This document shows, piece by piece, positions 869 through 56,989 of a stretch of 59,610 nt of DNA. The notes beneath the pieces are model-generated. The model was not told the DNA's origin and made no database searches. It was given only the letters and a program-made list of their open reading frames with translations. The position numbers and the translations under genes are program-made. Source of the DNA: Octopus bimaculoides (lineage: Eukaryota); assembly GCF_001194135.2 (NCBI RefSeq), contig NC_068986.1:72913859-72973468 (forward strand), in the 5' to 3' direction. Positions within the stretch are counted from its first letter, which is position 1; each line of letters begins with the position of its first letter.

Positions 869-1312
869 TATCAAGAATATAAAATGACTGCAGTTGAAAG
901 GTATATTATAAATTTGGTAATAAAAGAATCAAACTAAAAACTTTTATACTAGCAATGCATCCCAGCGTTGCCCAAATGTTATGACCTACAAGCACATTAT
1001 ATTATTTGTTCCTTTCTAATGGGTAGAATCAGCACAGCTGATGTATAGTTAATGGAATAATGGAAGTTATTGTTTGTTTTACAGTGAAGGGCGAGGGTAC
1101 AGTTTGCATGAAAGTACTTTCTGTTCTTAAGAAGGATCAGAAACTATGTATTGTTTCATCGTATAATAGGGGGTTAATACAATTTTTGTCCAGAAATCAC
1201 GTTTTCAATATTTAAATTTCGCACTACCCCCACCACAATTTCTTAATTTGTAACTTTTTTCGAATTTTTTTGTTATCTTTGTAGAAAAATACAGAGATTA
1301 CGAATCTGGGAA

Positions 1313-4540: not shown

Positions 4541-5746
4541 CTATGGCAAATAAACAGAGAACAATATTCAATTCAATATTAATAATAATAATAAACATCA
4601 ACAATTCTTACAGGAATTTTGAGGGGAGGGGGAGTTAATTAAACTGATTACACTGCTCAAATGGTACTTATTTAATCAAGCCTGAAATAATGAAAGGCAC
4701 AGTCGACCTCAGCAGAATTTAAACAAGAACATAAGGCTGGAAGAAATGGTGCTAACATTCTGCCCAGCATGCTAACAATAATGGTTTCAAATTTTGGCAC
4801 AAGGCCAGCAATTTCGGTGGAGTGGGTACATCAATTACAATTAACTCCAGTGTGTTCAACTGATACTTATTTTATCAACCCCGAAAGAATGAAAGCAAAA
4901 TCAACCTCAACAGAATGTGAAATCAGAACATAAAGACAGATGAAATACTGCTAAGCATTTCGCCCAGCATGCTAACAATTCTGCCAATTCCTCAATAATA
5001 ATAATAATCCTTTCTACTATAGGGACAAGGCCTGAAATTTTGTGGGAGGTGAGTAGTTTATTATATCAACTCCAGTATTTGACTGGTACTTACTTATTCT
5101 CGTTTGTTGAAACACTAAATTATGGAGCTTCTTTCACTTTCTATCTACCAAATCTACTCGCAAGGCTTTGGTCAACATGGAACTGTTGTAGGAGACAATT
5201 GCTCAAGGAGCCATGCACTGGGACTGAACTCAAAACCATGCTGTTGGGAAGCAAGCTTCATACTGCACAGTTATGCCTACACTAAATATTTAACTTTATG
5301 AGTGTTTTAGTACATGAATGGATTGGTAACAGTTTTAACAACATATTGGGTAAACAAAATTAAAGCAATTAAAAGGATGCTTAAAAATATTACCTTGAAT
5401 TGTTGATGGATGCTGTTGATAATAGGGTTGTAGACTTTGAGGTGCCAAAAATGCTGTATCATCTTCAGGTGTTCCTGATCTTTTAAAAGCTTCTAGAATT
5501 TCTTCATCAGTTAAACCTGTGAAAATGAAATTAGTTATATATCATCATCAATATATTTTTTAATGTTCATTATTCCATGCTTGCCTGAGATGGACGGAGT
5601 TTACTGAGGTAGATTTTCTACAGCCTGATGCCCTTCCTGTAGCCAACCTTTACATGTTTCCAGCAAAGCAATATTTCTCCATGGTCAAATATGTTTTTAT
5701 AGAATATTGAAAATGCAATGTCAAGATAAGGAGACACACATACACA

Positions 5747-5794
<48 letters not shown>

Positions 5795-8700
5795 ATGGCT
5801 GTCCACTCATGACCAAGGAAGACCATTGCTGACCATCAGGAACATTGTGCGCTCTATGACTAACTTATATTTTGCATTTGCGGCTCTGCTGGTGGCTAAT
5901 GAGCCCTGCACTTGACAAGCATGTGACTGCAAACATTGCAGACCAAGCTTTTCCCATTCACAATCCGAGCCATGCGCTTTCGTGCAGCTCGCTTAAGTTC
6001 TTCATGCTGGATACGTGCTCTCTCAAAACTGTCAATCCCCTCCTTAACCATAAATATATATATATACACACACATTTATATACACATTAGTGATTCACTA
6101 AATCGTCCATAGATTTTTATGGTGAATACATATGTACTAACAGAGAATTAAGTTCAGAATCAGCCAAACTGAGTAGTCCCTACTGATGAGGCTACAGAAT
6201 TAGTTGAAAGTGATTGATCAGAATAGGGAATTTCTCAACTGGTGTTTTCAGGCAATTACAGACCATATCAGTACATATGTATACAATTATGTGCTTTAGC
6301 TACAGCATTAGAGCTTTTTAGCTCTTATTTCTAGCAATGTAGGTGTTCTAACATCCTAGTGACATTTAGTGACGATTATAGTTTTCCTTTTTAGTAACAC
6401 ATTGCACACAGCTGTCTATATTAATTTTTATATATAAAGGTGCGTGCGTGCGTGCATGTAATTTTCAGTAAAAAAATTTTTTTTAATTGTTTGTATTTTC
6501 AGAGGGGAAAGTGAGTGATTTAAGGGCAATTTGGCTGTTGTTTCTAGCACATCCACAGACAACCCTCCTCGTTTCTTTATCACTCTCACATGTATTGATG
6601 TTTTACAATATTTTTCCCCCAATAAATACATTTTTATGCTATAAAAAAGAAAATTTGAGAAATTACAAATTTTTTGCAACCCCACTTCCTGCCCCCGATT
6701 GTTTCTGTTTAGAAATTAAAATATTGGAGAGCTTGAGAAGGTCACTGAGAAGGCCATTTACCCACAGTGATTAAAAAAATTATGGAGATGTACTTGCATA
6801 ACAAGTGACTTGGTCTAAGATCGTGTGCTGAAACAAAAACAATTGCAGCATAGAAGATGTCTGTAAGCCATTCAAGAACACACAAAAATTGTTAGCTTCA
6901 CAGCACTACTTAAATACAGAGGTCCCGATACATCTACGTAACGATATGAAGGGGAGGGTTAGTTTTTAGGGTTAGTTTTAGGGTTGGTTAGGGTTAGAGC
7001 TAGGGTGTCATTACACGTTCTCACAGCATACATTTAAAATGTTTTGTACATAACACCTGTATTTAGGTAGTACCTCTGTATTTAAGTAGAATCATTAAGG
7101 GACCTCTGTATTTAAGTAGTACCAGTTTCACTTCAACATTAAAATTTCATTTGTGTCAAAATATTTTTGTCACTTTGAAACTGCGACCTGTTCACTAACA
7201 AAACTTCACAAAAGTGATGCAGCATGAAGTTTTGCCAGTGAGCAAGCACACACATTCATTGTCTTTCATTCGTGTGTATGTGTATCTATATGTGTGCACG
7301 AGTGTGTATTGATGTGTGTGTGTCACTGTTGAAGTTGCTCATATAACTTGTTTGTGTATATATTGGCTTAGTGGTATAGAAGGTTTGGAAACTGTGAATA
7401 AGATGCAAGTTTCGAGTACTTGTCAGTAACTTTTTTCTTCTCCTTATCTTCTAACAGTAATTACCCAACCTTCTAGGCTCTTCTAACAGCGATCTCGCAT
7501 TCAAAAATTATATGGGTATTTTAAAAAATTTTTATTCACTAAATAATGTTTTTACATTACGTATACATTAATAGAATAAACTATCAGCTTTTCAAATAGC
7601 AAATTAAAACTTTAAAGAGAAAGTGAGAGACTTTGCAAATGAAAATGGAATACTCCGCAGTGAATGCAATGAATATTTAAGTCTGTGAAGAATTAGACAC
7701 AGTGAATGCAATGAATATTTAAATTTGCAAGAAACTGGAGTTTAAAAATTTCAATAAACTTGAGAAATCGAAATTACAGGAAATTTCTTACAAAAATGAA
7801 TTTATAAAAATATTTCCAGATGGTCAACACTTTAATTGCTTTCTTTTAGTACTTTTAGTAATTGTTACATACCTAATTAATAAGCAGCTTTCTCCATTAT
7901 ATAGTACAGAAGTACAATTTTAATAAACTCTTATGATTTTCACTAGCTTTTTTTTTTTTTTTTTGCTTGCTGAATCTGGTGGAAGAGGCAGTGTTTATGG
8001 CCTTTACAGGATTTTCAAGGCCAGTGATGCCATTAATGTACATTGGAAGTTATGTAAGTCAACACTCGCAAGAAAGACATGNNNNNNNNNNNNNNNNNNN
8101 NNNNNNNNNNNNNNNNNNNNNNNNNNNNNNNNNNNNNNNNNNNNNNNNNNNNNNNNNNNNNNNNNNNNNNNNNNNNNNNNNNNNNNNNNNNNNNNNNNNN
8201 NNNNNNNNNNNNNNNNNNNNNNNNNNNNNNNNNNNNNNNNNNNNNNNNNNNNNNNNNNNNNNNNNNNNNNNNNNNNNNNNNNNNNNNNNNNNNNNNNNNN
8301 NNNNNNNNNNNNNNNNNNNNNNNNNNNNNNNNNNNNNNNNNNNNNNNNNNNNNNNNNNNNNNNNNNNNNNNNNNNNNNNNNNNNNNNNNNNNNNNNNNNN
8401 NNNNNNNNNNNNNNNNNNNNNNNNNNNNNNNNNNNNNNNNNNNNNNNNNNNNNNNNNNNNNNNNNNNNNNNNNNNNNNNNNNNNNNNNNNNNNNNNNNNN
8501 NNNNNNNNNNNNNNNNNNNNNNNNNNNNNNNNNNNNNNNNNNNNNNNNNNNNNNNNNNNNNNNNNNNNNNNNNNNNNNNNNNNNNNNNNNNNNNNNNNNN
8601 NNNNNNNNNNNNNNNNNNNNNNNNNNNNNNNNNNNNNNNNNNNNNNNNNNNNNNNNNNNNNNNNNNNNNNNNNNNNNNNNNNAATTTTATTAGTTTTTTC

Positions 8701-11700
8701 AATCAGATAAACACTTTAATAATGTAAAAAAAAAACAAAGGAAAGAAAGAAAATAAAGCTGGTATTTACCTTTCCGTTTTAAAAATGACTTTTTATGTGC
8801 TATGGAAGTGTTCCGTACTTTATTATGATTCAGAAATGATACAGCAGTGTAGATCTGGAATTAATAACAGAATTATAACAATATTAATAATTTTTAAAAA
8901 AATTATTTAAGTATCCTCAATTAAAATGTTTCTCTTGCTACAATTTTCATTTAACCCTTTAGCATTTAAACTGGCCATATCTGGTCAAAATATTCTACCT
9001 CATTTTTATCTTCAAACTGGTCATAGCTGGCCTTTCACACCTACCCTACAGAGTCATTTTAAAAATAAACTACCTCATCAAAATCTCAAAGCTATGAAAT
9101 AATGCATGACTAATTTAAGAAAATGTGAATGCATAAGCATTATGTTTAAAACAGTAATCTGAATACTAAAGGGTTAAATATTTTTCTCCTTATGTTTTTT
9201 TATCTTTCAAAAAATCCCATTTTACAAGAAGAAATATCCAAGTTGACAATGTGGTGTCATTTGATGACAATCATTGAGACTGTCTCAGTGTCTCTCAATC
9301 TATCGTATAATTATTTATAAAAGGAAGAATGCATACAACCACAAAATGTAAACTACACAAATATTTAATTTTCACAATATATTGATTTTCACCCTCATCC
9401 ACCTTATAACTTCATATAAAAAAATCAAAACAAATAAAGAAGAAAGTTTTATTTGTATGCAAAACAATATTGAAAGACCATGCAATTCTACCAAAACGAT
9501 GAACCTCTTTCAGTTTCCATCTACCAAATCCACTCACAAGGCTTTTGTCTGCCCAAGGCTATAGTAGAAGATACGTGCCTAAAGTGTCACGCAGTGGGAC
9601 TGAACCCAGAACCATATGGTTGAGAAACAAGCTTCTTATCTTTTTTTTCTATTGCTCACAAGTGGCTAAACATAGAGGGGACAAAGAAAGACAGACAAAG
9701 GGATTAAGTCGATTACATTGACCCCAGTGCATAACTGGTACTTAATTTATCAACCCCGAAAGGATGAAAGGCAAAGTTGACCTTGGCGGAATTTGAACTC
9801 AGAATGTAACGGCAGACAAAATACCGCTAAGCATTTCGCCCAGCGTGCTAACGTTTCTGCCAAGCTTCTTACCACACAGCCACACCTAAAGATTTTTCAG
9901 TATGAGTTTCCAGTTTTGAAGATGTCAGAAGATCAGAATGTGTCAGATGTACAGGAGTAGTTAATAAGAAAAGAACTCATGAAATTAAACCTGCAGACAC
10001 CTCAGATGACTTGTTAGAAGTAGTAAATAGTTAGTGATATGCAGGTGACCTTATTTATTCACATTGGTTAGACATGCATTATCATGTAGCTTCAAAATTT
10101 CAATGATAAGCTCATTCATTGTTAAAATGACATTGTAGGGTAGTGTAAGAGGCCAGATCAGGCTTGTTTGAACATAAAACAGATAAAATATTTTAGCTGG
10201 ATATGGGCAGATTAAGTGTTAAAGGGTTAAAGCTGAAAGATGATGCAGTGAAATTATAATATTAGCAAAGTTAAGAATAAGTTTAGCAAAGTTCAGAAAA
10301 GGATGGAAAAAGAATGAGTTGTTGAATTTTGAATTTCTCCAGAAAAAGAGAAAAATATTTGAGAATGTCTGTTGGACGTGAAACAGTAAAAGAAATAAAA
10401 TGGAATTCAACTGTGCTGAAAAAGCTCCAATGAGTGTTGAGAAACACTTAAATTGGTGTGGACATTTAACAAATATGAAAACCACTGATGGATCAAATAT
10501 GGGTATTTTTGGTGGTGAGTACCTGTTGAAGAGATACCTCATGGAGGTATGATGTGAAGAGAGAGGTTGCATCTCATAAATATTATCAAGAAAAATTGTA
10601 ATACATCAACCAATGCCAACTGCAAAGGTTAAGACATCAGTGATGATAATAATGATGATGGCCCTCATAGGCTAATGACTGGAAGAATGCATCAACCCAT
10701 TTTTACTTTGAAGAAGTTAATTAAACTTTTATTTTTGCCAGATATAGAGACAAAGAATACTGAAAGTGGAAGATTATGTTAATACTAACATACTAATTTT
10801 TCTTTTAGCATATATTTACAAGACTTTTCAGAAAACTTACTAAATTTTCTCGTGGTACTGATGATGAATTTACCAAATTCCCAGAAACCTTTAAACAAAA
10901 ATGAAAAAAAAAAGAATTAAATTTATATAACTGTAATCAATGACATCACTTCTAATATAAATATACAGACATAATATATGTTTAATGGAAAACAGGATGA
11001 TAATGGTTGTGTATGTAAGGCATCAGTCTTTCACCTCCTTTTAAGTAACAGTGTAACATGATTTTTGTCTTTTGGTAGCAACTGTTATTTCCTATTTGCT
11101 TACCACTGAAAAGTATGAAAAATGGCTAGTATTTCCTTCAAACTTTATCTATGTTACATTTATTCAAGCCCCAAAGAATCCCTCTCAACATATGGCTATG
11201 ATGCTCCCCCACTACTCCTGCTCATGATCAGAGATGTACATATTGTCAGCCACTAAGGGACATGCTCTAGTGATTAAGGTCAAGCAACTGATAAGTAAAT
11301 CTGTGGTATTGAGCAGAATATTTGCTATAATAATATTTCTGCTTCAACAACTCAGTGCTGAATCTCTCTGAAATGTAATAGAAAATAGGTCAGTTTCAAA
11401 ACATTGATGACTAGGTCACAAAAGCAAAGCCTGAAGAGATTAGAAGTCATTTTCATTGATTTCTAGATGGAAGCAAATAGAAAATAACACTTACTGACCA
11501 AAGACAAAAAAAAAATTTCAATTTTGTTACACAGTATAATTAGTCTGCTCGTATCTCTTAACGACCCTCTTAGGCACAAAAGATTAATACAATTGATATT
11601 TAACAGATAAATGTTGTGGAAGGGAGGTTAAATATGGATACAAAAGGTTCTAGGTTTGAGAATTGATTGGATAAGGTAAGTAATCTAAGGTTAGACATAG

Positions 11701-13849: not shown

Positions 13850-14701
13850 ACAAAAATGGAAAGTAGGCTTTGCACAATTGAAGCTCTTAAAATACTTCTA
13901 GAAGTAATAAATTTCTAAATTGAAAGAACAAAAGGCACACAGAATTTTTAGAATTTATAAATTCTATAAAAATATCTATTAATGAAAACTAATGGTAATA
14001 AAGTACAATTAACAAACTACAGAACAGTATCTTGTCATACACACACACCACATAATATATGTGTGTGTGTATGTCTATATATANNNNNNNNNNNNNNNNN
14101 NNNNNNNNNNNNNNNNNNNNNNNNNNNNNNNNNNNNNNNNNNNNNNNNNNNNNNNNNNNNNNNNNNNNNNNNNNNNNNNNNNNNNNNNNNNNNNNNNNNN
14201 NNNNNNNNNNNNNNNNNNNNNNNNNNNNNNNNNNNNNNNNNNNNNNNNNNNNNNNNNNNNNNNNNNNNNNNNNNNNNNNNNNNNNNNNNNNNNNNNNNNN
14301 NNNNNNNNNNNNNNNNNNNNNNNNNNNNNNNNNNNNNNNNNNNNNNNNNNNNNNNNNNNNNNNNNNNNNNNNNNNNNNNNNNNNNNNNNNNNNNNNNNNN
14401 NNNNNNNNNNNNNNNNNNNNNNNNNNNNNNNNNNNNNNNNNNNNNNNNNNNNNNNNNNNNNNNGAGAGAGCACGTATCCAGCATGAAGAACTTAAGCGAG
14501 CTGAGCAAACGCGCACGGCTCGTAAAGTGAATGGGGAAAGCTTGGTCTGCAATGTTTGCAGTCGTGTATGCTTGTCAAGAGCAGGGCTCATTAGCCACCA
14601 ATGGAGCCGCAAATGCAAAATATAAGTTAGTCCTAGAGCACACAATGTTCCTGAAGGTCGGCAATGGTCTTCCTCGGTCACGAGTGGATGGCCATCATCA
14701 T

Positions 14702-32574: not shown

Positions 32575-33537
32575 GTTTCGCATCTATGTGCTTGTTCTCC
32601 TTCCATGCTGGCATGAGTTGGACGATTTGACAGGAGCTGGCCAAGCAGAAGCCTGTGCCATACTTCTGTGTCTGTTTTGGCATGGTTTCAACAGTTGGAC
32701 GCCCTTCCTAACACCAACCACCCCACAGAGTGGGCTGAGTGCTTTTTATGTGGCACCAGCACAGGCAAGGTCTGTTTTGGCATGATTTTTACACTTGGAT
32801 GCTCTTCCAAATGCCAACCATTTTACAATGTTAACTGGATGCTTTTTAAGTGGCACTAGCACTGGCAGGTTTACCAAGTAACTTGCAAGACAAGGAAGGT
32901 GATCACCGCTTGAATCTTGTGTCAGATGATGAAAGGTTAATGTGTGACAGAGAGACAGAAATAGGTGTTTCGCAGTGGAGGAGGTATATGGTTATCCAGC
33001 CAGATAATTGCTGACGTGGCTGATGACAGAACCGCCTGATTGGCACACGTGCCAGTGGAACGTTACAAGCATATCCAAGCGTGATCGTTGCCAGGGCCAT
33101 GGATTGGGTGTCATGCCAGTGACACGTGAAAAGCACCATTCGGGCGTGATCGCTGCTAGCGTTGCCTTACCGGCACATGTGCCAGTGGCATGTGAGAAAC
33201 AACATTCAAGTGTAGTTGTTGCCAGTGCTGCCGGATTGGCTCCTATGCAGGTAGCACGTAAAAACACCTTTTTAGCGTGGTCGTTGCCAGAACCACCTGA
33301 CTGGCCCTGGTGCCGGTGGCACGTAAAAAGCACCCACTACACTCTTAAAGTGGTTGGTATTAGGAAGGGCATCCAGCTGTAAAAACTTTGCCAGATCAGA
33401 ATGAGCCTGGTGCAGCCTCTGGCTCACCAGTCCTCTGTCTCACCAGTCCTGTCTCACCAGTCCTCTGTCAAACTGTCCAACCCATGCCAGTATGGAAAGC
33501 GGATGTTAAATGGTGATGATGATGATGATGATGATGT
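32575..33537. mobile_element. Two (GAT)n-tail retroposon copies back to back; the plus copy has an expanded array of ~70-bp units (~33010-33330)
   Basis: Repeated GTGGCACGT(G/A)AAAAGCACC…TGCCAG units; ends GGATGTTAAATGGTGATGATGAT. Confidence 0.8.
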
Positions 33538-34405: not shown

Positions 34406-37043
34406 ATTACATATACTACATATGCGATACTCTACTGCATGTAAAAAAAAGCACTTTCATGCAGAAGTAACAATATTGGCAATATTGAAGTGCACACCAC
34501 AAGACATAAATGCAATGGAGCAGCAAGAATCTGTTTGAGTCTGCCTTACTGACTCCATTGCAGTTATCAGAACATATAAAGGAATTGTTCAACTTACAAT
34601 TAGCAGCCAAATTCTTTATATCATACTCTACTATTGTATGAAAGGAAGGACACATCAGATAATGTGAGCTTTATACAGTGCTTGAAAAAAAAATGAAGTG
34701 GCTATGTGTGGAATGTCTTTGATCACAGGACAGCTCTGTGGACATTAAATGATGATGATGATGATAGTTGTGACCTACATGAGGAATATTCAGGTACATC
34801 TCATTTCATTGTTTCATTATAAACTGTACTTTAGACTTCAGTGGTGGAAGAAATATTTTTCTTGAAGCTTGTATTTTAAAGTTGTATACATGTACCTCTT
34901 CTTAATATTAGTTTCAAATTCTGGCACAAAGCCAGGAATTTTGTGGGAGGGGATAAGTTGTGACACTTATTTTATTGACCCCCAAAAGGACAAAAAGCAA
35001 AGTTGACTCTGGCAGAATTTGAACTCAGAACCTAAAAGACAGACAAAATGCTGCTAAGCATTTTGCCTGACATGCTAATGATTTACCAGTTTGACACCTT
35101 ACCTCTTCTCAATATAGTTGGAATGGGTTGAATTGACTGCTATGTTTGTTTTGTTTCTATCAGATATAATTCTCTCCATTATATTTATTACAAACCAATG
35201 AAAGAGTTTCTAGATGGTCACTCAGTTTGTTGTAAATTGTAACTAATTCTCTTCAACCACCCAGCCATCTTAAAAAGAGGATAATGAAATCTTGTATATA
35301 CAAAACAATGAGATGCCCACAGTAAAATACCTTTACTCACACCTCTGCTAGATCAGGGCTGACTTGGGATCAAATGACATCTTAAGAATTATATTGTGGT
35401 GGTAATGTTTCTACAGAAACAATCAACCAGGTTACAGTAGCAACCAAGTTTTTATTTTAAAAAGACTCAGTAAGCTCACAAACCACTTTGACCTTTTAGC
35501 ATTCAGATCATTCTGTCAAATGTAATGTTTATTTATTCACATTGTTTTGAATTAATCTGGCATTACCTTGTAGCTTTAAGATTTCAATGATATGATTGAT
35601 TCTTTTTAGGATAACACTGTTCGGTATGTGTGAGGAGCCAAATGTAGCTGGTTTGAACATTTTTATATTAGAATATTTAAGCCAGATATGGCCTCTTTAA
35701 ATTCCAAAGGGTTAAAATAATTACAATGTGTTTTATATTCTAAATATTGGAACAAGATGCTCCTCAATAAAGATAGGAAACTATCGAATGGATATTCTGT
35801 TTAAATTCTAATCTTTTATCACTTATATGTGTCAAGAAGTCAGCTCAAGTAAAAACAACTGTTCCTATCCCCAAGCAATGGTATCTGTGGCTTTTATCAG
35901 TAAGTGCCCTTTCTAGAATATTAAGTCTTGCACTGCATCTTAGATTGAAAAGAGGAAAAATCTTTTATTCTGTTTACTTTTTTTTTATCTCACTGCAAAG
36001 CAAATACCAACTCTGATAAACAATTAAAATGTAACAGTCCTGACGAAATGAAATTAGTTATTTATAATAAATGTTAAAGATAATTTTTGCATTTCATGGT
36101 TCTTATGTTCAAAGATATTCCGTTTCGTTAATCANNNNNNNNNNATATATAAACTTCCAATTGCCTAAAAAAATAAAATTTAAAAAAAAACCATTAATCT
36201 GGCAATTAATGTAGTTTTTATGTCTACAAAAAATTGGCAATCTGGTGCATCTGAAATTAAAGTTACAAGATGCAAAAACTAACACAATATTCTGCAGGAA
36301 AATCAAGAATTTAGGATTAAATATTCCTTGTGTTGCTTATTCTCTTATTCTGATATATTATTACAAAGCTTCCATCGATACGCAACGTTCGTATATTCAA
36401 ACATGTCATCAGATGGGAAATTAACACGACCGAATTATATTAAAAATTACTTATTATTTCATCAGGATTTGATTTTTTTGCATTTTCTAAGCATATTTTG
36501 TAATTTCAATCAAATGTCCCAATTTCTTATTTTAAAAAGTCAGAAAAATGTTAGAAAACGACAGCGACATCCATTCAAAATATTGTTATTCATACTGATA
36601 CTACTGCCGCCTGTTAGTGCAACCACCTCTATGAGACATACTTCTACCACTACCACTCCTTACTGCCGATTGTGAATTTCAAGTAGAAGCGATTCGTTCA
36701 TGCTATCCTAGTCTTCTTACAACGGAATAACTGTTTTTCCCTGCCAGTGTAACAAAAGTAACTGAATAGAAGAATAAAGGAGTTATAACCAAAGCTGTAT
36801 ATTCCTGTCGACCTGATTCCACGGTTCTGGAATTTTGGATTCCACCAAACCGAGATATCTTTTACTTCATTCTGATTATAAAGGTTGGAGCTTCATTCTC
36901 CTCGACTAGTTCGTTTAACTTAATTTTTATCGTAGAAATCTGGCCATTTTTTTGTATCATTTTTTTAAATATCATTTTTTGTATCATTTTTAAAAATCGT
37001 TTTAGTGTTATATATAAAGATATACATACATATATTTACCATA

Positions 37044-48700: not shown

Positions 48701-49594
48701 GCTGGAGTCTGGATAGCTCCATGTCAAACCGTCCAACCCATGGAAAGCGGATGTTAAATGATGATGATGATGATGATGACTCCAATAATGATGTTAAATA
48801 TCTACCAAAAAATAGAATCAGTATTTTCTGCAAGTTATGTTGCCTCAATAAACTTGACATATTGTCAACAGAAAATAGTTTCAAACATGATATTCCTCAA
48901 CAAAAATAGAGTGGTATATAAAACTGCTTTCTGCAGTTAAGGACAATAAAAGTCCTAATGAATATATGTTTTCCATTGGTGTAGCTAATAAAAGAGCACA
49001 TTTTTTCAAAATTGGTAACTTTTCAACAATTATTTTTACCTCTTCAATTTGCTTGTGTGATAAAAATTGAACCTCTTTTTTTTTTTTTTTTTTTTTTTTT
49101 TGTTAATTTCATGGCCTTCAAAGCACTTTCTAGAGTCATTACTTTATTTGACTGACCTCCTGTGTTTTTGAACTATCTACTCAATATCCTGTGATGTGTT
49201 GGTGGCTACTGACATCTGAAGAACCAAAACAAACCCTGTTGTCATAACTGCTCAACACTGGATAATTCTCTGGAGTTACATCTTTTTCATGTCACACCTA
49301 TATTAGTAGTTGTAAGTTTCATATATAATGCCATTGTTACTGAATCATAAAATTAATGAATGTAGAATACAATTATGTATATTATAACTAATAAAAGATT
49401 TCACATAATATAAGGGAAATGGGTAAAAAAACTATTTGGTATGTTTCTTGACACCTTTTATGTGTTCACTCCACTTAACTTTAGAACTTGGCTTTGAGCG
49501 CCTCTACTAGAAATGTCAATAAAAGGGTTAAATATTAAATTTTTGTTTCCTTTATCTTTCAGAGGTTGCTTGATGTAGGTGTTTTTCTTCAAAC

Positions 49595-49703
49595 ATGAGC
49601 CAAACTCCTAACCAAAATGCCAAGGCCTTTAAAATCTGGAACAGCGAAAGAACTACGAAAAAACCTGTTGTAGCAAGTAATCTGCAAGATTTAGTTTTAA
49701 AGG
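49595..49703 (+). CDS. DFFA: CIDE-N domain, first coding exon (MSQTPNQNAKAFKIWNSERTTKKPVVASNLQDLVLK-G); symbol tentative, from domain plus synteny
   Basis: Matches the CIDE-N start pattern (FKIW..ER..KK.VVAS.L.DL). The acceptor TTTCAG at 49561-49562 implies an upstream non-coding exon. Confidence 0.85.
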
Positions 49704-52700
49704 GTAAAATATTTTTGTAATTGTTTTGTATTCAGTAATTTGTAACAATATAAAATCAATAATTAAACAAGATGTGAGGTGAAAATACATAACTACATAT
49801 TTTTAATTGTTAAAATTGCAAACTTAGAAAACATAAGAGTAGCTGATTTTATTGTATTTATAACACAAACTAAAAAAAAAAAAAAAATCTTAGATTGGCT
49901 CTTATTAATTCCCTTGCTAAATATTTACATAAACTGATACTTCTTCCTCAAAATTAAATTTTTGTCCTTGTTAATTTATTCCTGCAACCACAAACTATGT
50001 GTTGATCAAGAATATCAGTCATGTAAACTTCAACTTCTTGCAAAATTTATGAGGACCATGGACACAGTTCCCTTTCTCCACACCAAACCTTTAAACAAAA
50101 TGGAAGTACAACAAACATTTCTTGAAACAATATTGATATTGTGTGGAGATGGACCAGGGTTTTGCTAAGACCTAGCCTTGGTGATGCTCCATGATAAATA
50201 TAGATATAATCAATTGACTCTGTCATATTGGTTAACAATAAGAAAGATAACCATTAAAGCCAAAGATATTGAAGAAATCTCCAAAATACAATCAATGGTT
50301 ATTGTATCAAAATACATGTAAAGACATTTGTGTGAAGTCATATTTAACATATTACAGTACATTTGGATATGAGAAAATCTGCTGTTGTGGAAATAGACAA
50401 AAGCAGAAATTCTCCTCCTGCACATATGTGAAAATACATGCTGCACTGTGAATGGCATCATTGGATGATAGGACACATGCGTTTATGTTATTCCACTTTC
50501 TCAGCTATGAATGCCAAATCTGTCATTCATAGCTCAATAAGTAAAAAAAATCATTCTTATCAAAACCTTATATGATACATTCGTTGAAGTGTGTAAAGCT
50601 TGGTGAGACTAAAATTAGATAAATAATGTCACACTAAGCAGCATTGGATAAAATATTTTGGGGTAAAATTATATTTAATACATTTGAATGCATTTGGACA
50701 TGGAGAAGACTTTCTCCTAAGGAAATAGTCCTGGCAGAAAATTCTCTTCCAAGACAGTCCAACCTATGCCAGCATAGATCACAATTAAAACATTAGTCAA
50801 TGAAGGAGCCTCTAAGTATTTAGTTCACCTACTAGAAATGGCAACGAAATGCCCCTCTTATCACATGTTATCATTTAAGACCAAAAGTGAAGGACATGTT
50901 GGATAATGTGTACATATATATATAATTTCTGAAAAAAATGAGATGTTAATGATTGGAAAGCTTTTGATCATAAGTCTGCTCAATTCTGTGGTTAAACAAC
51001 AACAACCTGTTGAAGCATCACTAAAGCTCATGACAAAGAATAAGATTTCATTTTGAAATATATCAAATCCCATAAACTAAATGACAATGTTGATACAACA
51101 CAGAATAAAGAAAGTGGCTGCACAAATAATAGAACATGCAGCGTTTACTCTTATTCTTATATTTCTTTTTCATTCTTTCTAAGTTTGACTTTATGGTTGA
51201 GAAATCCCAGTAATATGCTGTACTCCATTTAATTGATACTTCTTGTATTCATTCACAATTTTGGCCTTCTACTTAAGGATAAAATTAATATTATTTATTG
51301 ATCTCTTTTATTGTAGGAAAACTTAAACTTGGGTTAACCACTGGGACAGATATTCGATTAGTTTTGGAAGCTGATGGAACTGATGTAGATGATGAAGATT
51401 ATTTTGCACTTCTTCCTAATGATACAGTATTTGTTCTGTTAGAATCTGATGAACGGTGGCATTCAGCAAATGAAGGAGGTAAGGCATTTACCAATGTAAT
51501 TATATTAATATTTATTCATTTAAAATACTATGTTCAACGTTGTGTTCATATTATTTCGTAACTGATTAATAATTCTCTTAATTTTGAGTAGAGATGTTGA
51601 GATACAACAGCTCTTGTACTACTGACATGTGATTAGAATGTCGTAGGAAGGAATCACAAGAGAGATTCTTTAAATTTTGCCAATTGGCACAAGACGTAAA
51701 AGTGGACCCATCACCCATGAATGAGCTGGTTGGGTAATATCCATAATCTCAGTTGGTCACACTTGGGAATCTAGCCAGAAAATGTAATGATGGTTGTTTC
51801 TGATAGGGTGTGATGGAAGATTGCCTGAAGACTCTACCCCATGGACCTGTCCAGGAAAATTGGGTGGAAAAAGTGGATGGATAGATGTTGGTGTAGTTTA
51901 ATATATATCTTCTCTGGATCTTTGCTGTCCCCTGCTAGCTGGACCACCACCAGTACCTTCTTTGGCCAGATGTTCAGTTTACTGCTGTCACGAGAGAGAA
52001 TCTTGCACCTTCAGGAATCTGAGAGGTCCTTCTTAACCTGTCGACCGCATGGTGTAGAGTTTGGGTAATTTTTTACAAATGTCAGCACTATGTAATTATT
52101 GCTGTGTGCCCTTCTTTTTATATGGTCAACCGTTTCACTCCCTTCCTTCTAATTACTTTGGTTGATGAAGGTGTATGTCATGGGAAGAGATTCTTTTATG
52201 GAAGTAATTCCAGACCTATATTGCTTTTCTGTCTTTAGTGTTGACCATAGATACTACATTTTGAAAACTTTTATTGTACAATGTAAAGCAAAGACACACA
52301 GAACACACCTACACGCACCCACATGCACACATATATGTTTGGGTGTGGGCCCGTATATATGCATGTGTGTTTTTATATATGTATGTATGACTGTACACAT
52401 ATGTGGTTGTGAGATGCAGGTATGACTGTGAGGCATGCAGACACAGCTGTGAAGTGCAGGTATGGTCATGTAATCAAGCAGCTTGCTTGATCTTGGACTG
52501 GTGTCTTCTACTGTAGCCCAAGACAACTAAAGCCTTGTAAGTGGATTTGGTAGATGAAAACAGAAAGAAGTCCAATGCATATATATATTATATCTTGTCT
52601 TGTAATGGCATTCACTCAAAAAATGTGTACCAATAATTTAAACATTTTTGCTTCTCTAAATTCAAACATTATTACTTTAGTACATGGAAAGTTATTATTG

Positions 52701-53976
52701 CTATTTTTACTAGTATCTTGGACAACACCATCTAATGTGTTCTTTATTTGAGCAGCAACATAGCAGCTCCCTTTTGAGCTGCCCCCAGTGCTGTCTTAAG
52801 GCACAGGCACACTTGGTAGTTGCCTGGATGCTTCATAGGTTTAGGAGCTCAAATCTGATCTATGTATGCTCTGTCTTGCTGTCAAATTAATACTATTGGG
52901 TTCAGTGCATTGATTTCCCCAGGGGCCTATGATGCTGCTGGCTACCCCTATGAAGGACCCACTGTTGAGCACCAAAATTTATTGAGAATTGGATAATACA
53001 TTACCAGTTTTTCCAGAAAACAATTAGGGGAAAAAAAATTGTTGGTTTTGGGAATATTTAGAAGTTGTCTAAATTGCCAGACGATTTACAAAATGTTTTC
53101 TATAATTTTTGCATTATTTTGCTGACTTTTTCAGATGGAGGAAAGGATGTCAAAGCAATAAAGAATTCTGTAAAGGATATAAACTCTGTTGTGCCTGTTG
53201 TAACATCTGTTACCCAACCAACTATTTCAGTAGCTTCTGCATCACCAGTAGATGTTGCCTCTCCTGCTTTACCTCTTCCTCCAGTCTGGTCTAATCCACC
53301 TTCTACAGTTAGTATCGGAAGTACAACTAATGGCAGCACCCCAATAGCTTCAGAGTCTGTCCAACTTCCAGAAGAATCTTCTTTCACATCAAAGAATGGC
53401 ATCAATATAGCTGATTTCAAGAAAGATGCATACCAATGGAATGAACAGTCGACAAGGCTCTTCATAGAACTTTATAAGCATTATCATGAACTTTTTTTGC
53501 AACCTAACATTAAAAAAAAGAATCTTTGGGAAGAAATTTCTAAAAAGATGCTTGAGTATGGGTTTGAAATTAGCGCTCGTCAATGTGAAAACAAATGGAA
53601 ATCACTAAAACTGTCTTTCAAAAAAGTTGAAGAATATAATAGAAACTCAGGATTAAAACGAAAGTGTAGCTTCTATGATGAAATCTCAGAGATTCTTGGA
53701 CAATCAAATGTGATTTCAATTAGTTTGGCTAGTACATCATCTAACTCTGCAACTGAAATTCTTGAGAGTTCCACAGAAAAGGTTCGACGCTTTAAGCCAA
53801 AACGACCGCGTTCTTCAGAATGCAGTACCATGGACATTTTGAACTGGCTCAAAGCAAACAAAGAAGAAGAGAAACGCCAGCAAGAAGAAGACCGCCTGGA
53901 AATGCGTAAAATGCATGAGGAAAAAATGAAAGCTTTCTATAGCTTTTTAGATGTACTTAAGAAATGGAAAAGTTGA
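49595..53976 (+). CDS. CIDE-N (DFFA/ICAD-like) plus Myb/SANT-like trihelix fusion protein, 370 aa; join(49595..49703,51317..51478,53135..53976)
   Basis: 109+162+842 = 1113 nt, one open frame. Both introns are phase 1 GT-AG (AAGG|GTAAAA...TTGTAG|GA; GGAG|GTAAGG...TTTCAG|AT). A CTGAC branch-like site lies at ~53122 and AATAAA at 53981. Confidence 0.8.
51317..51478 (+). CDS. DFFA: CIDE-N domain, second coding exon (G-KLKLGLTTGTDIRLVLEADGTDVDDEDYFALLPNDTVFVLLESDERWHSANEG); symbol tentative
   Basis: Signature LVLE.DGT.VDDEDYF..LP..T.FV.L...E.W; canonical splice sites; 162 nt. Confidence 0.92.
51640..52070 (-). mobile_element. Degenerate RTE-like LINE 3' fragment in intron of the CIDE-N gene
   Basis: Decayed …IWPKKVLVVVQLAGDSKDPEK… similarity. 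Confidence 0.45.
53135..53976 (+). CDS. Terminal exon: S/T/P/V-rich linker, Myb/SANT-like trihelix domain (~53431-53700), basic patch KVRRFKPKRPR (~53779-53811), C-terminal coiled coil
   Basis: W..E.T.LFIELY...KK.LWEEIS.KM...GF..S..QC.NKWKSLK..FKK...NR.SG..R.C.FYDEI..ILG is the Myb_DNA-bind_4/GT-1/MSANTD pattern. The reading frame is intact. Confidence 0.9.
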
Positions 53977-54726
53977 GTAAAATAAATAGAAAGCAACGAA
54001 AAAACTATGTTCACACTAATGTTCTCACCAGAACAAAGAATATCTCATGTCATTTTATTTTCATCAGATATATCATACATTTCTGCACCGTAGCAGTGTC
54101 TTGTGTAAAAATCACATCTTGAACAATGATTATAACTATATGAATTGAAAAAAATTAAAATATATTTGTATTTGAATTACTGCATGCATAAAACAGAAAT
54201 ACATTTATATATTTTTATATTTAGTTTTGTTATATATGTAAATTTGATCTTTCAGAAAAACAATAATAGTTTTGGTCAAATTATTTTATATGAAACTCAG
54301 CTATTTTCTATTTATTTTACATCCATTTTCTTGGATGGTAAATTTAATCTCTCACCCAGTTTAACACCACCATCTGGCTCAGAAAGTATCTCTAGTGTTA
54401 TTCATTCTGTTATCATCCAGTTTAAAACCTTCAACTGGTCCTTGGATGCCTTTTGCTGAGTCCACTTTGTTGTCACTGAGTTGTACACTCCCAGCTGGTC
54501 CTGGGATATATGTCTTTAGCAGAGTACACTCTGTTGCAAGTATTCAGATCAGATCCTCAATCTGAGGTTAACTTCTTTTCTTTTCCCTAGCAGTCTCAGT
54601 GACCCTAAAAAGGGTCATGGGAATTGTTTTTCTTTTCCTAATGATTCAGTATCATGAAATTAAATAAATGAAAATCAAATACGCATGGGAAAGGGACAGT
54701 GTTTGTAAATTTGGACATTTGCATTA

Positions 54727-56015: not shown

Positions 56016-56313
56016 TGGTCCTGTGCCGGTGGTACATAAAAAGCACCATCCAAGCATGATTGTTGCTAGTGCCGCCTGACTGGCCCTCGTACCGGTGGCA
56101 TGTAAAAAGCACCCACTATACTCTCAGAATAGTTGGTTTTAGGAAGGGCATCCAGCTGTAGAAACCTTGCTAGATCAGACTGGAGCCTGGTTCAGCCTTC
56201 TGGCTTGCCAGTCCTCAGTCAAACCATCCAGCCCATGCTAGTATGGAAAGCAGATGTTAAACGATGATGATGATGATGATGTATATATATTTATATATAT
56301 ATATATATTTATA

Positions 56314-56348
<35 letters not shown>

Positions 56349-56989
56349 NNNNNNNNNNNNNNNNNNNNNNNNNNNNNNNNNNNNNNNNNNNNNNNNNNNN
56401 NNNNNNNNNNNNNNNNNNNNNNNNNNNNNNNNNNNNNNNNNNNNNNNNNNNNNNNNNNNNNNNNNNNNNNNNNNNNNNNNNNNNNNNNNNNNNNNNNNNN
56501 NNNNNNNNNNNNNNNNNNNNNNNNNNNNNNNNNNNNNNNNNNNNNNNNNNNNNNNNNNNNNNNNNNNNNNNNNNNNNNNNNNNNNNNNNNNNNNNNNNNN
56601 NNNNNNNNNNNNNNNNNNNNNNNNNNNNNNNNNNNNNNNNNNNNNNNNNNNNNNNNNNNNNNNNNNNNNNNNNNNNNNNNNNNNNNNNNNNNNNNNNNNN
56701 NNNNNNNNNNNNNNNNNNNNNNNNNNNNNNNNNNNNNNNNNNNNNNNNNNNNNNNNNNNNNNNNNNNNNNNNNNNNNNNNNNNNNNNNNNNNNNNNAGTA
56801 TGACACCATCCCTTCCTTCCTTATTCATCTATCACCCCTTCCTTTCTCATTCATAAACACAAGAGTATTATTATAGTAGATTATCTTGGTAACCATGGGA
56901 GCTATGAAAAAATACAAAGCCCAGCAACACCACCAGATCATTCTACACATCTGTGTAATTTTTCCGCTGACCGCTAAATCCATAATTTT

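What the first reader, a model, noticed from the sequence alone, without database searches (positions are those of the whole stretch)
49595..53976. CIDE-N (ICAD-like) domain spliced in frame to a Myb/SANT trihelix DNA-binding domain
Seen: three exons join through two phase-1 GT-AG introns into an intact 370-aa protein: CIDE-N, S/P-rich linker, Myb/SANT-like domain, basic NLS-like patch, coiled coil. Known: the CIDE-N proteins I know (DFFA/ICAD, DFFB/CAD, CIDEA/B/C, fly Drep1-4) pair CIDE-N with DFF-C, nuclease or CIDE-C regions, and CIDE-N mediates CIDE-CIDE binding and oligomerisation. I do not know this architecture from the literature. Inference: it could tether CAD nuclease, or CIDE-N oligomers, to specific DNA sites, or act as an oligomerising transcription regulator. 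That would parallel the Myb-like partner that escorts Harbinger transposases.
Basis: partly seen in the sequence, partly recalled or inferred. Interest (0 to 1): 0.9.

Follow-up and report, generated by a model that had tools for sequence, protein, structure and literature searches.

The report
Octopus DFFA gene with Myb domain swap
This real, expressed cephalopod gene is the counterpart of DFFA/ICAD, the partner of the apoptotic DNase CAD, but its usual regulatory tail has been replaced by a DNA-binding Myb/SANT module, which implies that cephalopods handle the CAD system differently from other animals.

Summary
Exons 49595-49703, 51317-51478 and 53135-53976 join through two phase-1 GT-AG introns into a 370-aa protein. 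It has a CIDE-N domain (Pfam E 5e-25), a disordered linker, a Myb_DNA-bind_4/trihelix domain (E 2e-19), a basic patch and a long C-terminal helix.

The same protein is annotated in Octopus vulgaris and Argonauta. Spliced transcripts carry it in a cuttlefish, in another decapodiform, and in Euprymna, where a paper's supplement labels it 'CideC'. Selection is strongly purifying (dN/dS 0.002-0.05 in the folded parts).

New here: the gene is the positional and structural orthologue of DFFA/ICAD.
- It lies head-to-head with Pex14, as canonical CIDE-N+DFF-C genes do in two gastropods and a bivalve. DFFA and PEX14 are also adjacent in human.
- Its two introns match theirs in position and phase.
- Homology to DFFA stops exactly at the exon 2/3 junction.

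Exon 3 is instead a full copy of a stand-alone Myb+helix family of marine invertebrates. Cephalopods keep DFFB/CAD, and no canonical DFFA was found.

Among the 150 best-scoring cluster representatives from about 15 billion proteins, only cephalopods combine the two domains. The function is inferred, not shown: probably a DNA-anchored CIDE-N adaptor. This is a new variant of a known kind.

The parts
36700..36883 (+). Non-coding first exon (5'UTR). The 3' end at 36883 (AAAG|GT donor) is well defined; the 5' end is approximate. It sits inside a block, 36249-36918, that is conserved with Argonauta.
   Evidence: The 5'UTR exon of the Sepia cDNA matches window 36801-36850 and Argonauta L008 4228-4263. 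In a four-species alignment the squid cDNA diverges exactly after AAAG, where the three genomes read GT.
49563..49703 (+). Coding exon 1. The acceptor is at 49563 and the ATG at 49595. It encodes aa 1-36 plus the first base of codon 37, the first half of CIDE-N.
   Evidence: The phase-1 intron falls in '..LVLK|GKLKLGL', the same place as in mollusc DFFA genes.
49704..51316 (+). Intron 1 (GT-AG, phase 1).
   Evidence: It is 94.5% identical to O. vulgaris with indels, against 98-99% and no indels in the exons.
51317..51478 (+). Coding exon 2 (162 nt). It holds the second half of CIDE-N, including the acidic EADGTDVDDEDYF patch.
   Evidence: The same exon is 162 nt in Argonauta and 159 nt in gastropod, chiton and bivalve DFFA.
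51479..53134 (+). Intron 2 (GT-AG, phase 1). This is the point where homology to DFFA ends.
   Evidence: hhalign of the cephalopod profile against the invertebrate DFFA profile aligns residues 6-89 only.
53135..53418 (+). Exon 3, first part: a Ser/Pro/Thr/Val-rich linker (aa 91-185), predicted disordered.
   Evidence: pLDDT is below 50 for 90-186. This is the most divergent part between cephalopods, with dN/dS 0.18.
53434..53694 (+). Exon 3: Myb/SANT-like trihelix DNA-binding domain (aa 191-277), with conserved W192, W222 and W245.
   Evidence: Pfam Myb_DNA-bind_4 E 2e-19. GT-1 trihelix E 4e-11. Helices 194-211, 218-231 and 238-262 have pLDDT above 90. dN/dS 0.002.
53785..53811 (+). Basic patch RRFKPKRPR (aa 308-316), NLS-like.
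   Evidence: Read directly from the sequence. A K/R-rich patch sits at the same place in stand-alone family members. Nuclear import was not tested.
53827..53970 (+). C-terminal long helix (aa 322-369) carrying the family motif MHxEKM..F..FLDVLKK.
   Evidence: AlphaFold predicts a single helix with pLDDT 92-98. The motif is shared with stand-alone Myb+helix proteins. dN/dS 0.024.
53974..54045 (+). Stop codon (53974-53976), AATAAA signal at 53981-53986, and a short 3'UTR.
   Evidence: Conservation with Argonauta runs to 54045. Squid cDNAs carry only 42-67 nt after the stop.
5440..8854 (-). Neighbouring gene Pex14, N-terminal domain exons at 8854-8768 and 5517-5440, transcribed away from the CIDE-N gene (head-to-head).
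   Evidence: A tblastn probe hits both exons. Pfam Pex14_N E 1.2e-12 on the joined exons. The same arrangement is seen in Argonauta, Haliotis, Gigantopelta and Sinanodonta.

Best explanation
This is the cephalopod orthologue of DFFA/ICAD. The two ancestral exons that encode the CIDE-N domain have been kept. The downstream exons that encode the DFF-C regulatory/chaperone domain and the caspase-cleavage motif have been replaced. In their place is one captured exon, entering in the same phase 1, that encodes a complete Myb/SANT (trihelix) DNA-binding domain, a basic patch and a C-terminal helix.

The product is most likely a nuclear protein that binds DNA through the Myb domain. Its CIDE-N domain has both the basic and the acidic surface, so it could polymerise head-to-tail with itself, or dock onto the CIDE-N of the nuclease CAD/DFFB, which cephalopods retain. 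It would then act as a DNA-anchored CIDE-N adaptor rather than a caspase-released soluble inhibitor.

Shown here: the gene model, its expression as one spliced mRNA in relatives, purifying selection, orthology to DFFA, the domain replacement, and the presence of CAD in a cephalopod. Inferred only: DNA binding, nuclear location, CIDE-N polymerisation, and any effect on CAD.
For: Gene and protein.

Expression as a fusion:
- A cuttlefish RNA-seq contig maps at 99-100% identity to the A. pharaonis genome in separate blocks. It joins exon 2 directly to the Myb exon across a 3.7-kb intron.
- Fourteen RNA-seq contigs of another decapodiform, from different sequencing runs among the six listed, each hold the intact 350-aa ORF on ~1.3-kb contigs.
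- A Euprymna transcript has a 350-aa ORF with CIDE-N and Myb_DNA-bind_4.
- After M1 the next Met is M229, inside the Myb domain, so exon 3 cannot encode a stand-alone Myb protein.

Constraint: Octopus-Argonauta dN/dS is 0.049 for CIDE-N, 0.002 for Myb and 0.024 for the C-terminus. Exon sizes 109/162/842 are identical in Argonauta. Exons are 98-99% identical to O. vulgaris, introns 94%.

Orthology to DFFA:
- The gene is head-to-head with Pex14 in the window and in Argonauta.
- Canonical CIDE-N+DFF-C genes have the same arrangement in Haliotis, Gigantopelta and Sinanodonta.
- DFFA and PEX14 are adjacent in human 1p36.22 (PMC554762).
- Mollusc DFFA introns 1 and 2 have the same positions and phase 1-1. 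Vertebrate Dffa phases are 1-1-0-1-0 (PMC2426694).

Replacement:
- Profile homology to DFFA covers residues 6-89 only.
- There is no Pfam DFF-C hit and no DFF-C remnant in four cephalopod loci.
- Residues 174-369 match stand-alone Myb+helix proteins of limpet, hemichordate, coral and starfish at E about 1e-22.

Partner: Euprymna has a DFFB with CIDE-N plus DFF40 (E 2.9e-66). That catalogue has no DFFA entry, and no cephalopod-labelled hit appears in the top 120 of a DFFA-profile search.

CIDE-N competence: K13, W15, R19 and the EDGT/acidic run are conserved. DREP2 K13, which aligns with K13 here, is required for DREP2 filament formation (PMC6292858).
Against: No experiment or interaction prediction was run, so DNA binding, oligomerisation and CAD binding are inferences from domain identity.

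In mammals, ICAD's chaperone and inhibitor activity depends on regions C-terminal to CIDE-N (my knowledge of the family). Those regions are gone here, so a CAD-directed role may have been lost.

The DE[VP]D motif found just after the exon 2/3 junction in mollusc DFFA is absent from all cephalopod orthologues.

The absence of a second, canonical DFFA elsewhere in cephalopod genomes is not proven. Several unlabelled transcriptome hits with CIDE-N+DFF-C have unknown taxa. The chiton DFFA is not next to Pex14, so the synteny is not universal in molluscs.

No Octopus transcript was inspected directly. Support for the Octopus junctions is by orthology and the NCBI gene model.
Confidence: 0.5

Rival explanations
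1. The gene is a neofunctionalised, CAD-independent regulator. It has left the DNA-fragmentation pathway and works as a transcription or chromatin factor. CIDE-N serves only as a self-polymerising module that clusters Myb domains on DNA, much as SAM or PB1 head-to-tail polymers do in other transcription regulators.
For: All DFFA-specific parts (DFF-C, DE[VP]D) are lost. The CIDE-N domain has both charged patches, like the self-polymerising DREP2, DREP4 and FSP27 domains. The strongest constraint is on the Myb domain, with dN/dS 0.002. CIDE-N is also found fused to zf-CW and to C2H2 fingers in other invertebrates. [quoted passage not shown]
Against: The gene still sits in the DFFA slot. CAD is still present in cephalopods, and no other DFFA was found. 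The CIDE-N domain is as conserved as in bona fide DFFA (40-48% identity to invertebrate DFFA/Drep CIDE-N).
Confidence: 0.3
2. The protein is still a classical ICAD. It chaperones and inhibits CAD through CIDE-N alone, or through the linker. The Myb/basic/helix part merely supplies nuclear import or retention, replacing the C-terminal NLS of ordinary DFFA.
For: Compact invertebrate DFFAs end in a KKRK-type basic tail. The captured module brings its own basic patch. CAD is present and no other DFFA was detected.
Against: A need for an NLS alone would not explain dN/dS 0.002 across a 95-aa DNA-binding fold, or the invariant C-terminal helix. No caspase motif is left to release CAD. The linker evolves fast (dN/dS 0.18) and is predicted disordered.
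Confidence: 0.1
3. The model is an artefact: a chimera of two neighbouring genes (a CIDE-N-only gene and an independent Myb gene), an assembly error, or a decaying pseudogene.
For: Exon 3 is a single long exon that resembles stand-alone genes. No Octopus transcript was examined here. One cuttlefish contig carries a 44-nt frameshifting cassette. The A. pharaonis genome annotation mis-models the gene.
Against: Spliced cDNA contigs carry the whole ORF in at least three decapodiform data sets. Exon sizes and phases are identical in Octopus and Argonauta. There is no start codon for an independent Myb protein. Purifying selection is strong on all folded parts. The same model is found in three genome assemblies.
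Confidence: 0.02
4. The gene is a CIDE (CIDEA/B/C, FSP27-type) lipid-droplet protein, as its label 'CideC' in the Euprymna apoptosis catalogue suggests.
For: The best SwissProt BLAST hits of the Euprymna transcript are CIDEC_HUMAN and CIDEA_MOUSE, over the CIDE-N part only. CIDE-A is the second-best solved relative.
Against: No CIDE-C region is detected. CIDE-C is reported only from vertebrates (PMC2426694). Synteny and intron positions tie the gene to DFFA.
Confidence: 0.01

Closest known systems
DFFA / ICAD / DFF45, including the compact ~200-aa invertebrate DFFA-like proteins (CIDE-N + DFF-C)
   Same: The N-terminal CIDE-N domain matches the invertebrate DFFA profile (hhalign E 3e-30). The gene occupies the same chromosomal slot, head-to-head with Pex14. 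Both CIDE-N introns have the same positions and phase.
   Different: There is no DFF-C domain, no DE[VP]D caspase motif and no KKRK tail. Instead there is an 842-nt exon encoding linker + Myb/SANT + basic patch + helix. Chaperone or inhibitor activity towards CAD is therefore doubtful, and was not tested.
Drosophila DREP2 (also DREP4 and FSP27): CIDE domains that form head-to-tail filaments
   Same: DREP2 is the best solved relative by sequence (E 8e-17, gap-free over residues 5-84) and by fold (target-normalised TM-score 0.94, rmsd 0.9 A). Both the basic patch (K13, R19, K22/K23, K36) and the acidic patch (E54-D64) are present. K13 aligns with the DREP2 residue whose mutation abolishes oligomers.
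   Different: The C-terminal region is unrelated. Filament formation by the cephalopod domain was not tested.
Stand-alone Myb_DNA-bind_4 ('trihelix', GT-1-like) proteins of marine invertebrates, with a basic patch and a C-terminal MHxEKM..LLD helix (Patella, Ptychodera, Acropora, Patiria)
   Same: Residues about 174-369 align end to end with these 190-350-aa proteins (E 1e-22 to 1e-14). The order is the same: Myb, acidic/Ser stretch, K/R patch, helix. Pfam calls are the same.
   Different: They have no CIDE-N domain and are independent genes, multi-copy in the starfish. Their function is unknown. The Patella gene shows no linked transposase.
TSNARE1 (and NAIF1): vertebrate genes that captured a Harbinger-derived Myb-like trihelix exon
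   Same: They are a precedent for a whole Myb-like trihelix domain, carried on a single exon, being spliced into an unrelated host gene (bioRxiv 10.1101/2021.02.09.430442).
   Different: A Harbinger origin is documented for those genes but has no evidence here. The host gene is a SNARE, not a CIDE-N gene. In TSNARE1 the Myb exon is optional, whereas here it is the only 3' exon found.
Other CIDE-N fusions to nucleic-acid or chromatin modules
   Same: A sea-slug protein has zf-CW + CIDE-N (P0065, Plakobranchus). A 440-aa protein has CIDE-N + C2H2 zinc fingers (P0133, taxon unknown).
   Different: The partner domains and domain order differ, and none has a Myb domain. Their reality as genes was not checked.

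Membership tests
CIDE-N domain family (PF02017) | Sequence match to the family model above the curated threshold | tested here: met
   87.9 bits against a cut-off of 23.5, E 4.6e-25, covering model positions 2-76 of 76.
CIDE-N domain family (PF02017) | Ubiquitin-like alpha/beta roll fold | tested here: met
   The AlphaFold model has pLDDT about 94 for residues 10-86. Foldseek finds DREP2 CIDE with target-normalised TM-score 0.94 and rmsd 0.9 A.
CIDE-N domain family (PF02017) | Charged surfaces that mediate CIDE-CIDE contacts | tested here: met
   K13, R19, K23 and E54/D56/acidic run are conserved. The residues named in PMC6292858 are matched. Actual binding is not testable here.
DFFA / ICAD | Orthologous locus (neighbour of Pex14) | tested here: met
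   for the cephalopods. for canonical DFFA in two gastropods and a bivalve. PMC554762 for human. The chiton is an exception.
DFFA / ICAD | Conserved CIDE-N intron positions and phases (1-1) | tested here: met
   Vertebrate phases are taken from PMC2426694.
DFFA / ICAD | DFF-C domain (PF09033) | tested here: not met
   There is no Pfam hit at E <= 1. The hhalign match to the DFFA profile ends at residue 89. tblastn finds no DFF-C remnant in the window or in three other cephalopod loci.
DFFA / ICAD | Caspase-3 type DxxD site after CIDE-N | tested here: not met
   Mollusc DFFA carries DE[VP]D at aa 88-95. The cephalopod proteins have DxxD only inside the CIDE-N acidic run.
DFFA / ICAD | Binds, chaperones and inhibits CAD/DFFB | not testable with these tools
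   DFFB is present in Euprymna. No interaction test was possible.
Myb_DNA-bind_4 / trihelix (GT-1-like) | Sequence match above the curated threshold | tested here: met
   70.2 bits against 27, E 2e-19. GT-1 DNA-binding domain E 4e-11 over 88 residues.
Myb_DNA-bind_4 / trihelix (GT-1-like) | Three helices with regularly spaced tryptophans | tested here: met
   Helices 194-211, 218-231 and 238-262. W192, W222 and W245 are invariant in five cephalopod sequences.
Myb_DNA-bind_4 / trihelix (GT-1-like) | Sequence-specific DNA binding | not testable with these tools
   Inferred from homology only.
CIDEA/B/C (FSP27) family | CIDE-C domain | tested here: not met
   No such Pfam hit. CIDE-C is reported only in vertebrates.
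PIF/Harbinger Myb-like partner protein (NAIF1-type) | Linked or co-domesticated DDE transposase, or terminal inverted repeats | tested here: inconclusive
   No transposase-sized ORF is present in the window. None lies within 10 kb of the Patella stand-alone homologue, where only a LINE is found. Only one stand-alone locus could be examined.

The most novel reading that the evidence does not exclude
Coleoid cephalopods have rewired the apoptotic DNA-fragmentation module. Their only DFFA is a DNA-bound protein with no caspase-cleavable inhibitor domain. CAD would then be held on, or delivered to, specific chromatin sites through CIDE-CIDE polymerisation. That would allow site-directed or non-apoptotic DNA cleavage, for example in differentiation or in neurons, or a wholly different way of licensing CAD.
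Probability: 0.15. Interest if true: 0.85.

Novelty: new variant of a known kind. Interest (0 to 1): 0.6.

Why it matters
DFFA/ICAD is known as the obligatory chaperone and caspase-released inhibitor of the apoptotic nuclease CAD. Here a whole animal class appears to have kept CAD while exchanging ICAD's regulatory half for a DNA-binding domain.

If that holds, either cephalopod CAD is folded and restrained by another route, or the CIDE-N handshake has been put to use on chromatin. Both options can be tested directly with recombinant proteins.

The case is also a clean, datable example of exon capture. A phase-1 intron accepted a complete stand-alone gene, under strong purifying selection since before octopods and decapodiforms split.

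It also corrects database and literature labels ('DFFA-like', 'DFFA', 'CideC') that hide the unusual architecture.

Tried and rejected
(1) A CIDE-N-only profile search returned only short fragments. It was useless for architecture or context beyond showing no Myb co-occurrence.

(2) Look-ups of the starfish Myb protein P0072 and the gecko DFFA P0358 found nothing on record. A vertebrate DFFA locus and the multi-copy starfish loci therefore could not be inspected.

(3) I searched for DFF-C remnants or alternative DFF-C exons with 18 mollusc DFF-C queries against the window, Argonauta, O. vulgaris and Sepia loci. Nothing scored below E 0.03, and the hits were scattered.

(4) Harbinger or transposon origin of exon 3: no transposase is present in the window or beside the Patella homologue, which has only an unrelated LINE. 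The idea is neither supported nor excluded.

(5) The taxa of the closest stand-alone Myb proteins and of the CIDE-N+C2H2 protein could not be determined, because the sources give no names.

(6) The conserved 5'UTR palindrome was tested as an RNA element. It has no Rfam match and no unusual folding energy (z-score 0.55).

(7) The built-in profile comparison of A6 against A3 failed, so I ran hhalign locally. The A6 against A1 comparison is circular, because A1 contains the query fragment. I rely on the independent phmmer hits instead.

(8) Literature searches for CIDE-N with Myb, for domain-architecture surveys, and for cephalopod DFF found no description of this architecture.

(9) Chance ORF and gene-chimera explanations were rejected.

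Full report
**1.

Joining 49595-49703, 51317-51478 and 53135-53976 through two GT-AG introns gives one uninterrupted 1113-nt reading frame of 370 codons. Both introns are in phase 1.

Pfam places a full-length CIDE-N domain at residues 10-85 (87.9 bits, E 4.6e-25). It places a full-length Myb_DNA-bind_4 domain at 191-277 (70.2 bits, E 2e-19), with weaker MADF and Myb_DNA-bind_3 matches on the same stretch. Against solved structures, the N-terminus matches the DREP2 CIDE domain (E 8e-17, gap-free over residues 5-84). The Myb part matches the Arabidopsis GT-1 trihelix domain (E 4e-11).

An AlphaFold model built on 33 sequences gives three confident modules:
- CIDE-N, residues 10-86;
- a helical Myb domain, residues 190-280;
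- one long helix, residues 322-369.

Each has pLDDT above 90. They are separated by low-confidence stretches at 90-186 and 281-317. The CIDE-N part superposes on DREP2 with rmsd 0.9 A.

Exon 3 lies in the only ORF longer than 264 codons in the 59.6-kb window that does not run through a run of N. At 35% GC, about 1e-6 such ORFs are expected by chance.

**2. It is a real, expressed, conserved gene**

The protein is annotated in Octopus vulgaris (99% identical, 'DNA fragmentation factor subunit alpha-like') and in Argonauta hians (87%, 'uncharacterized'). Transcriptome assemblies of decapodiform cephalopods also carry it (72% and 70% identical).

Genome comparisons:
- In Argonauta the three coding exons have exactly the same sizes (109/162/842 nt) and GT-AG borders, although the introns are much shorter.
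- Against O. vulgaris, the exons are 98-99% identical with no indels. The introns and flanks are 93-94.5% identical with many indels, and all splice sites are kept.

Transcript evidence for the join, all from relatives:
- A cuttlefish RNA-seq contig (L007) maps at 99-100% identity to the Acanthosepion pharaonis genome in separate blocks. These are a 5'UTR exon, coding exon 1, a 44-nt cassette, exon 2 and the Myb exon. Exon 2 is joined directly to the Myb exon across 3.7 kb.
- Fourteen RNA-seq contigs of another decapodiform, from different sequencing runs among the six listed, each hold the intact 350-aa ORF on contigs of about 1.3 kb, far too short to contain the introns.
- The Euprymna scolopes reference transcriptome lists transcript c136069_f1p1_1249 (PMC9389742, Table S1). 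Its 350-aa ORF carries CIDE-N 9-83 and Myb_DNA-bind_4 172-257. These are nearly the same coordinates as I obtain for P0003.

After M1 the next methionine is M229, inside the Myb domain. Exon 3 therefore cannot encode an independent Myb protein.

Nei-Gojobori dN/dS between Octopus and Argonauta:

| Region | dN/dS |
|---|---|
| CIDE-N | 0.049 |
| Linker | 0.18 |
| Myb domain | 0.002 |
| C-terminal region | 0.024 |

dS is about 0.8-1.8, close to saturation, so the ratios are approximate but clearly far below 1.

I did not see an Octopus transcript. For Octopus itself the junctions rest on orthology and on the public gene model.

**3. Fuller gene model**

The 5'UTR exon of the cuttlefish cDNA matches window 36801-36850 and the corresponding Argonauta block. 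In a four-species alignment, the squid cDNA leaves the genomic sequence exactly after AAAG, where all three genomes read GT. The non-coding first exon therefore ends at 36883.

Coding exon 1 begins at an acceptor at 49563, 32 nt before the ATG. An AATAAA signal lies 5 nt after the stop codon, and the 3'UTR is short.

**4. What it is: the DFFA orthologue with its C-terminal half replaced**

Three independent lines agree.

(a) Position. Upstream on the minus strand, the window carries Pex14 N-terminal-domain exons at 8854-8768 and 5517-5440 (Pfam Pex14_N E 1.2e-12). The two genes therefore diverge head-to-head, as they do in Argonauta. Canonical DFFA-like genes (CIDE-N + DFF-C, about 200 aa) lie in the same head-to-head arrangement with Pex14 in:
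- the gastropod Haliotis asinina;
- the gastropod Gigantopelta aegis;
- the bivalve Sinanodonta woodiana.

In human 1p36.22 the gene order is ...CORT-DFFA-PEX14 (PMC554762). That the human pair is also head-to-head is my recollection, not a tool result. A chiton DFFA has other neighbours.

(b) Gene structure. Mollusc DFFA genes have four coding exons of 88-100/159/131/213-222 nt, with intron phases 1-1-0. Intron 1 splits the codon after '...K' in 'K|GK.KLG'. Intron 2 lies five residues after the conserved Trp. The Octopus introns are at these same two places and in the same phase; exon 2 is one codon longer. Vertebrate Dffa has phases 1-1-0-1-0, with the CIDE-N region on exons 1-2 (PMC2426694).

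(c) Homology boundaries. A profile of the cephalopod proteins aligns to a profile of invertebrate DFFA over residues 6-89 only (E 3e-30). That is exactly up to the end of exon 2. No DFF-C match is found by Pfam. tblastn with 18 mollusc DFF-C segments also finds none, against the window or the Argonauta, O. vulgaris and Sepia loci.

Residues about 174-369 instead align end to end with stand-alone proteins of 190-350 aa. These have the same order: Myb domain, Ser/acidic stretch, K/R patch, and a C-terminal helix with the motif MHxEKM...LLD.L.K. E-values reach about 1e-22. Named members come from a limpet, a hemichordate, corals and a starfish, where the family is multi-copy.

The simplest reading is that a complete gene of this family was captured as a 3' terminal exon behind the phase-1 intron 2 of DFFA, and that the DFF-C exons were lost.

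**5. How widespread is it?**

An exhaustive HMMER search covered 1.84 billion cluster representatives. I checked its 150 best hits for both domains with local phmmer. Only the cephalopod cluster has both. The rest are CIDE-N-only proteins or Myb-only proteins, including large multi-Myb proteins.

A protein with moderately similar copies of both domains would score above the list's lower bound of 66 bits. Only very divergent two-domain proteins could have been missed. None of about 240 CIDE-N proteins listed in two profile searches carries a Myb Pfam domain.

CIDE-N is not otherwise restricted to DFF-C, nuclease or CIDE-C partners. I saw zf-CW + CIDE-N in a sea slug, and CIDE-N + C2H2 zinc fingers in a protein of unknown origin.

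**6. The CAD context**

The Euprymna transcriptome table contains a clear DFFB/CAD orthologue, with CIDE-N 12-86 and DFF40 116-324 (E 2.9e-66). It has no DFFA entry. The only 'DFFA' string in the table belongs to the annotation of the fusion transcript.

The DFFA-profile search returned chiton, gastropod and bivalve DFFA-like proteins, but no hit labelled as cephalopod among the 120 listed. Several unlabelled transcriptome hits with CIDE-N + DFF-C remain of unknown taxon. The absence of a second, canonical DFFA in cephalopods is therefore likely but not proven.

Mollusc DFFA proteins carry a nearly invariant DE[VP]D a few residues into exon 3. This is a caspase-type motif, comparable to the cleavage sites of mammalian ICAD (my knowledge of the family). 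The cephalopod proteins have no DxxD outside the CIDE-N acidic run.

**7. Mechanism (inferred)**

The CIDE-N domain keeps both charged faces:
- basic: K13, R19, K22/K23, K36;
- acidic: E54, D56, D59-D64.

According to PMC6292858, two-patch CIDE domains (DREP2, DREP4, DFF40, FSP27) polymerise head-to-tail, whereas mammalian DFF45 has only the acidic patch. DREP2 K13D is monomeric, and DREP2 K13 aligns with K13 here.

The Myb domain has the trihelix signature: W192, W222, W245 and a basic third helix. It is almost invariant over the octopod-decapodiform split.

I therefore propose a DNA-anchored CIDE-N adaptor. The Myb domain, and perhaps the C-terminal helix through self-association, would place the protein on DNA. 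CIDE-N would then either build homopolymers or engage the CIDE-N of CAD.

I cannot tell from sequence whether this restrains CAD, targets it, or has nothing to do with it any more. My estimates are:
- about 0.4 for a role linked to CAD;
- about 0.3 for a CAD-independent oligomerising regulator;
- about 0.1 for a near-classical ICAD with a borrowed nuclear-localisation module.

**8. Comparison with what is known, and novelty**

By orthology the gene belongs to the DFFA lineage, and it is a bona fide CIDE-N and Myb_DNA-bind_4 protein. It fails two defining features of DFFA/ICAD: the DFF-C domain and the caspase site. It should not be called ICAD in the functional sense. It is not a CIDEA/B/C protein, because it has no CIDE-C.

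The closest precedent for the evolutionary event is TSNARE1, in which a single-exon Myb-like trihelix domain was captured by a SNARE gene. In that case the source was a Harbinger transposon. Here I found no transposase near the gene, or near the one stand-alone homologue I could inspect.

The architecture is visible in automatic annotations and in one supplementary table, where it is labelled 'CideC'. I found no paper that notices or discusses it. I rate it a new variant of a known kind. It is of real interest to people working on the evolution of apoptosis and on cephalopod genomics, but it has no demonstrated function.

**9. Verdict**

The architecture, its rarity and the plausibility of the CAD idea hold. 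The 'unknown to databases' claim and the Harbinger parallel do not.
- The main addition is that this is the DFFA orthologue itself, with a domain replacement.
- Interest 0.6.

Noticed in passing
window 36249-36918 (core 36815-36846): The promoter/5'UTR block of the gene is conserved with Argonauta at about 71% identity over 680 nt. Its core, GATTCCAcgGTTCTGGAATTTTGGATTCCACC, is nearly identical in Octopus, Argonauta, Sepia and a squid cDNA. It contains three mutually complementary ATTCCA/TGGAAT units (including a TTCnnGAA palindrome). It has no Rfam match and no unusual RNA folding energy, so it may be a transcription-factor site inside the transcribed 5'UTR.
   Followed up: partly
window 8854-8768 and 5517-5440, minus strand: These are Pex14 N-terminal-domain exons (Pfam E 1.2e-12). 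The rest of the Pex14 gene, including its first coding exon between about 8.9 and 36.7 kb, was not located.
   Followed up: partly
L010 21947-21990 (Acanthosepion pharaonis genome), L007 341-384: A 44-nt cassette exon sits between coding exons 1 and 2 in one cuttlefish RNA-seq contig. It shifts the frame, so the called ORF (P0004) starts inside CIDE-N. It could be a poison exon, a regulated isoform or an unproductive splice. It is not seen in the other decapodiform cDNAs.
   Followed up: no
P0005 / L010 10001-35878: The public Acanthosepion pharaonis model named 'DFFA' is mis-built. It has a spurious N-terminus and leaves the true exon 3 after '...APKSG', losing the whole Myb domain. The cDNA shows the correct structure.
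   Followed up: partly
window 706-871, 23208-23356, 30758-30898, 33464-33537, 48723-48779, 56132-56284; L008 6522-6749 and 8804-8962: A dispersed repeat of about 150 bp is present in several copies in the window and twice in the Argonauta locus, at 70-82% identity. It looks like a SINE-type element shared by octopods.
   Followed up: no
window about 8040-8690, 14080-14470, 56310-56800: Runs of N (1530 in total) mark assembly gaps. The window is about 92-94% identical to O. vulgaris over 8.8 kb, so it comes from a different Octopus species.
   Followed up: no
P0065 (Plakobranchus ocellatus) and P0133 (unknown taxon): These are other unusual CIDE-N architectures: zf-CW + C-terminal CIDE-N, and CIDE-N + C2H2 zinc fingers. 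CIDE-N has apparently been joined to chromatin or DNA-binding modules more than once.
   Followed up: partly
A3 alignment; P0046 aa 92-95, P0312 88-91, P0314 90-93, P0325 90-93: Compact mollusc DFFA proteins carry a nearly invariant DE[VP]D motif just after the exon 2/3 junction and end in a KKRK-type tail. This suggests caspase release and nuclear import are ancestral features that the cephalopod gene lost or replaced.
   Followed up: partly
L014 11830-17043: A full-length non-LTR retrotransposon (an ORF1-like gene plus an endonuclease/reverse-transcriptase/RNase H ORF) lies directly downstream of the Patella stand-alone Myb gene. It is probably an unrelated insertion.
   Followed up: no
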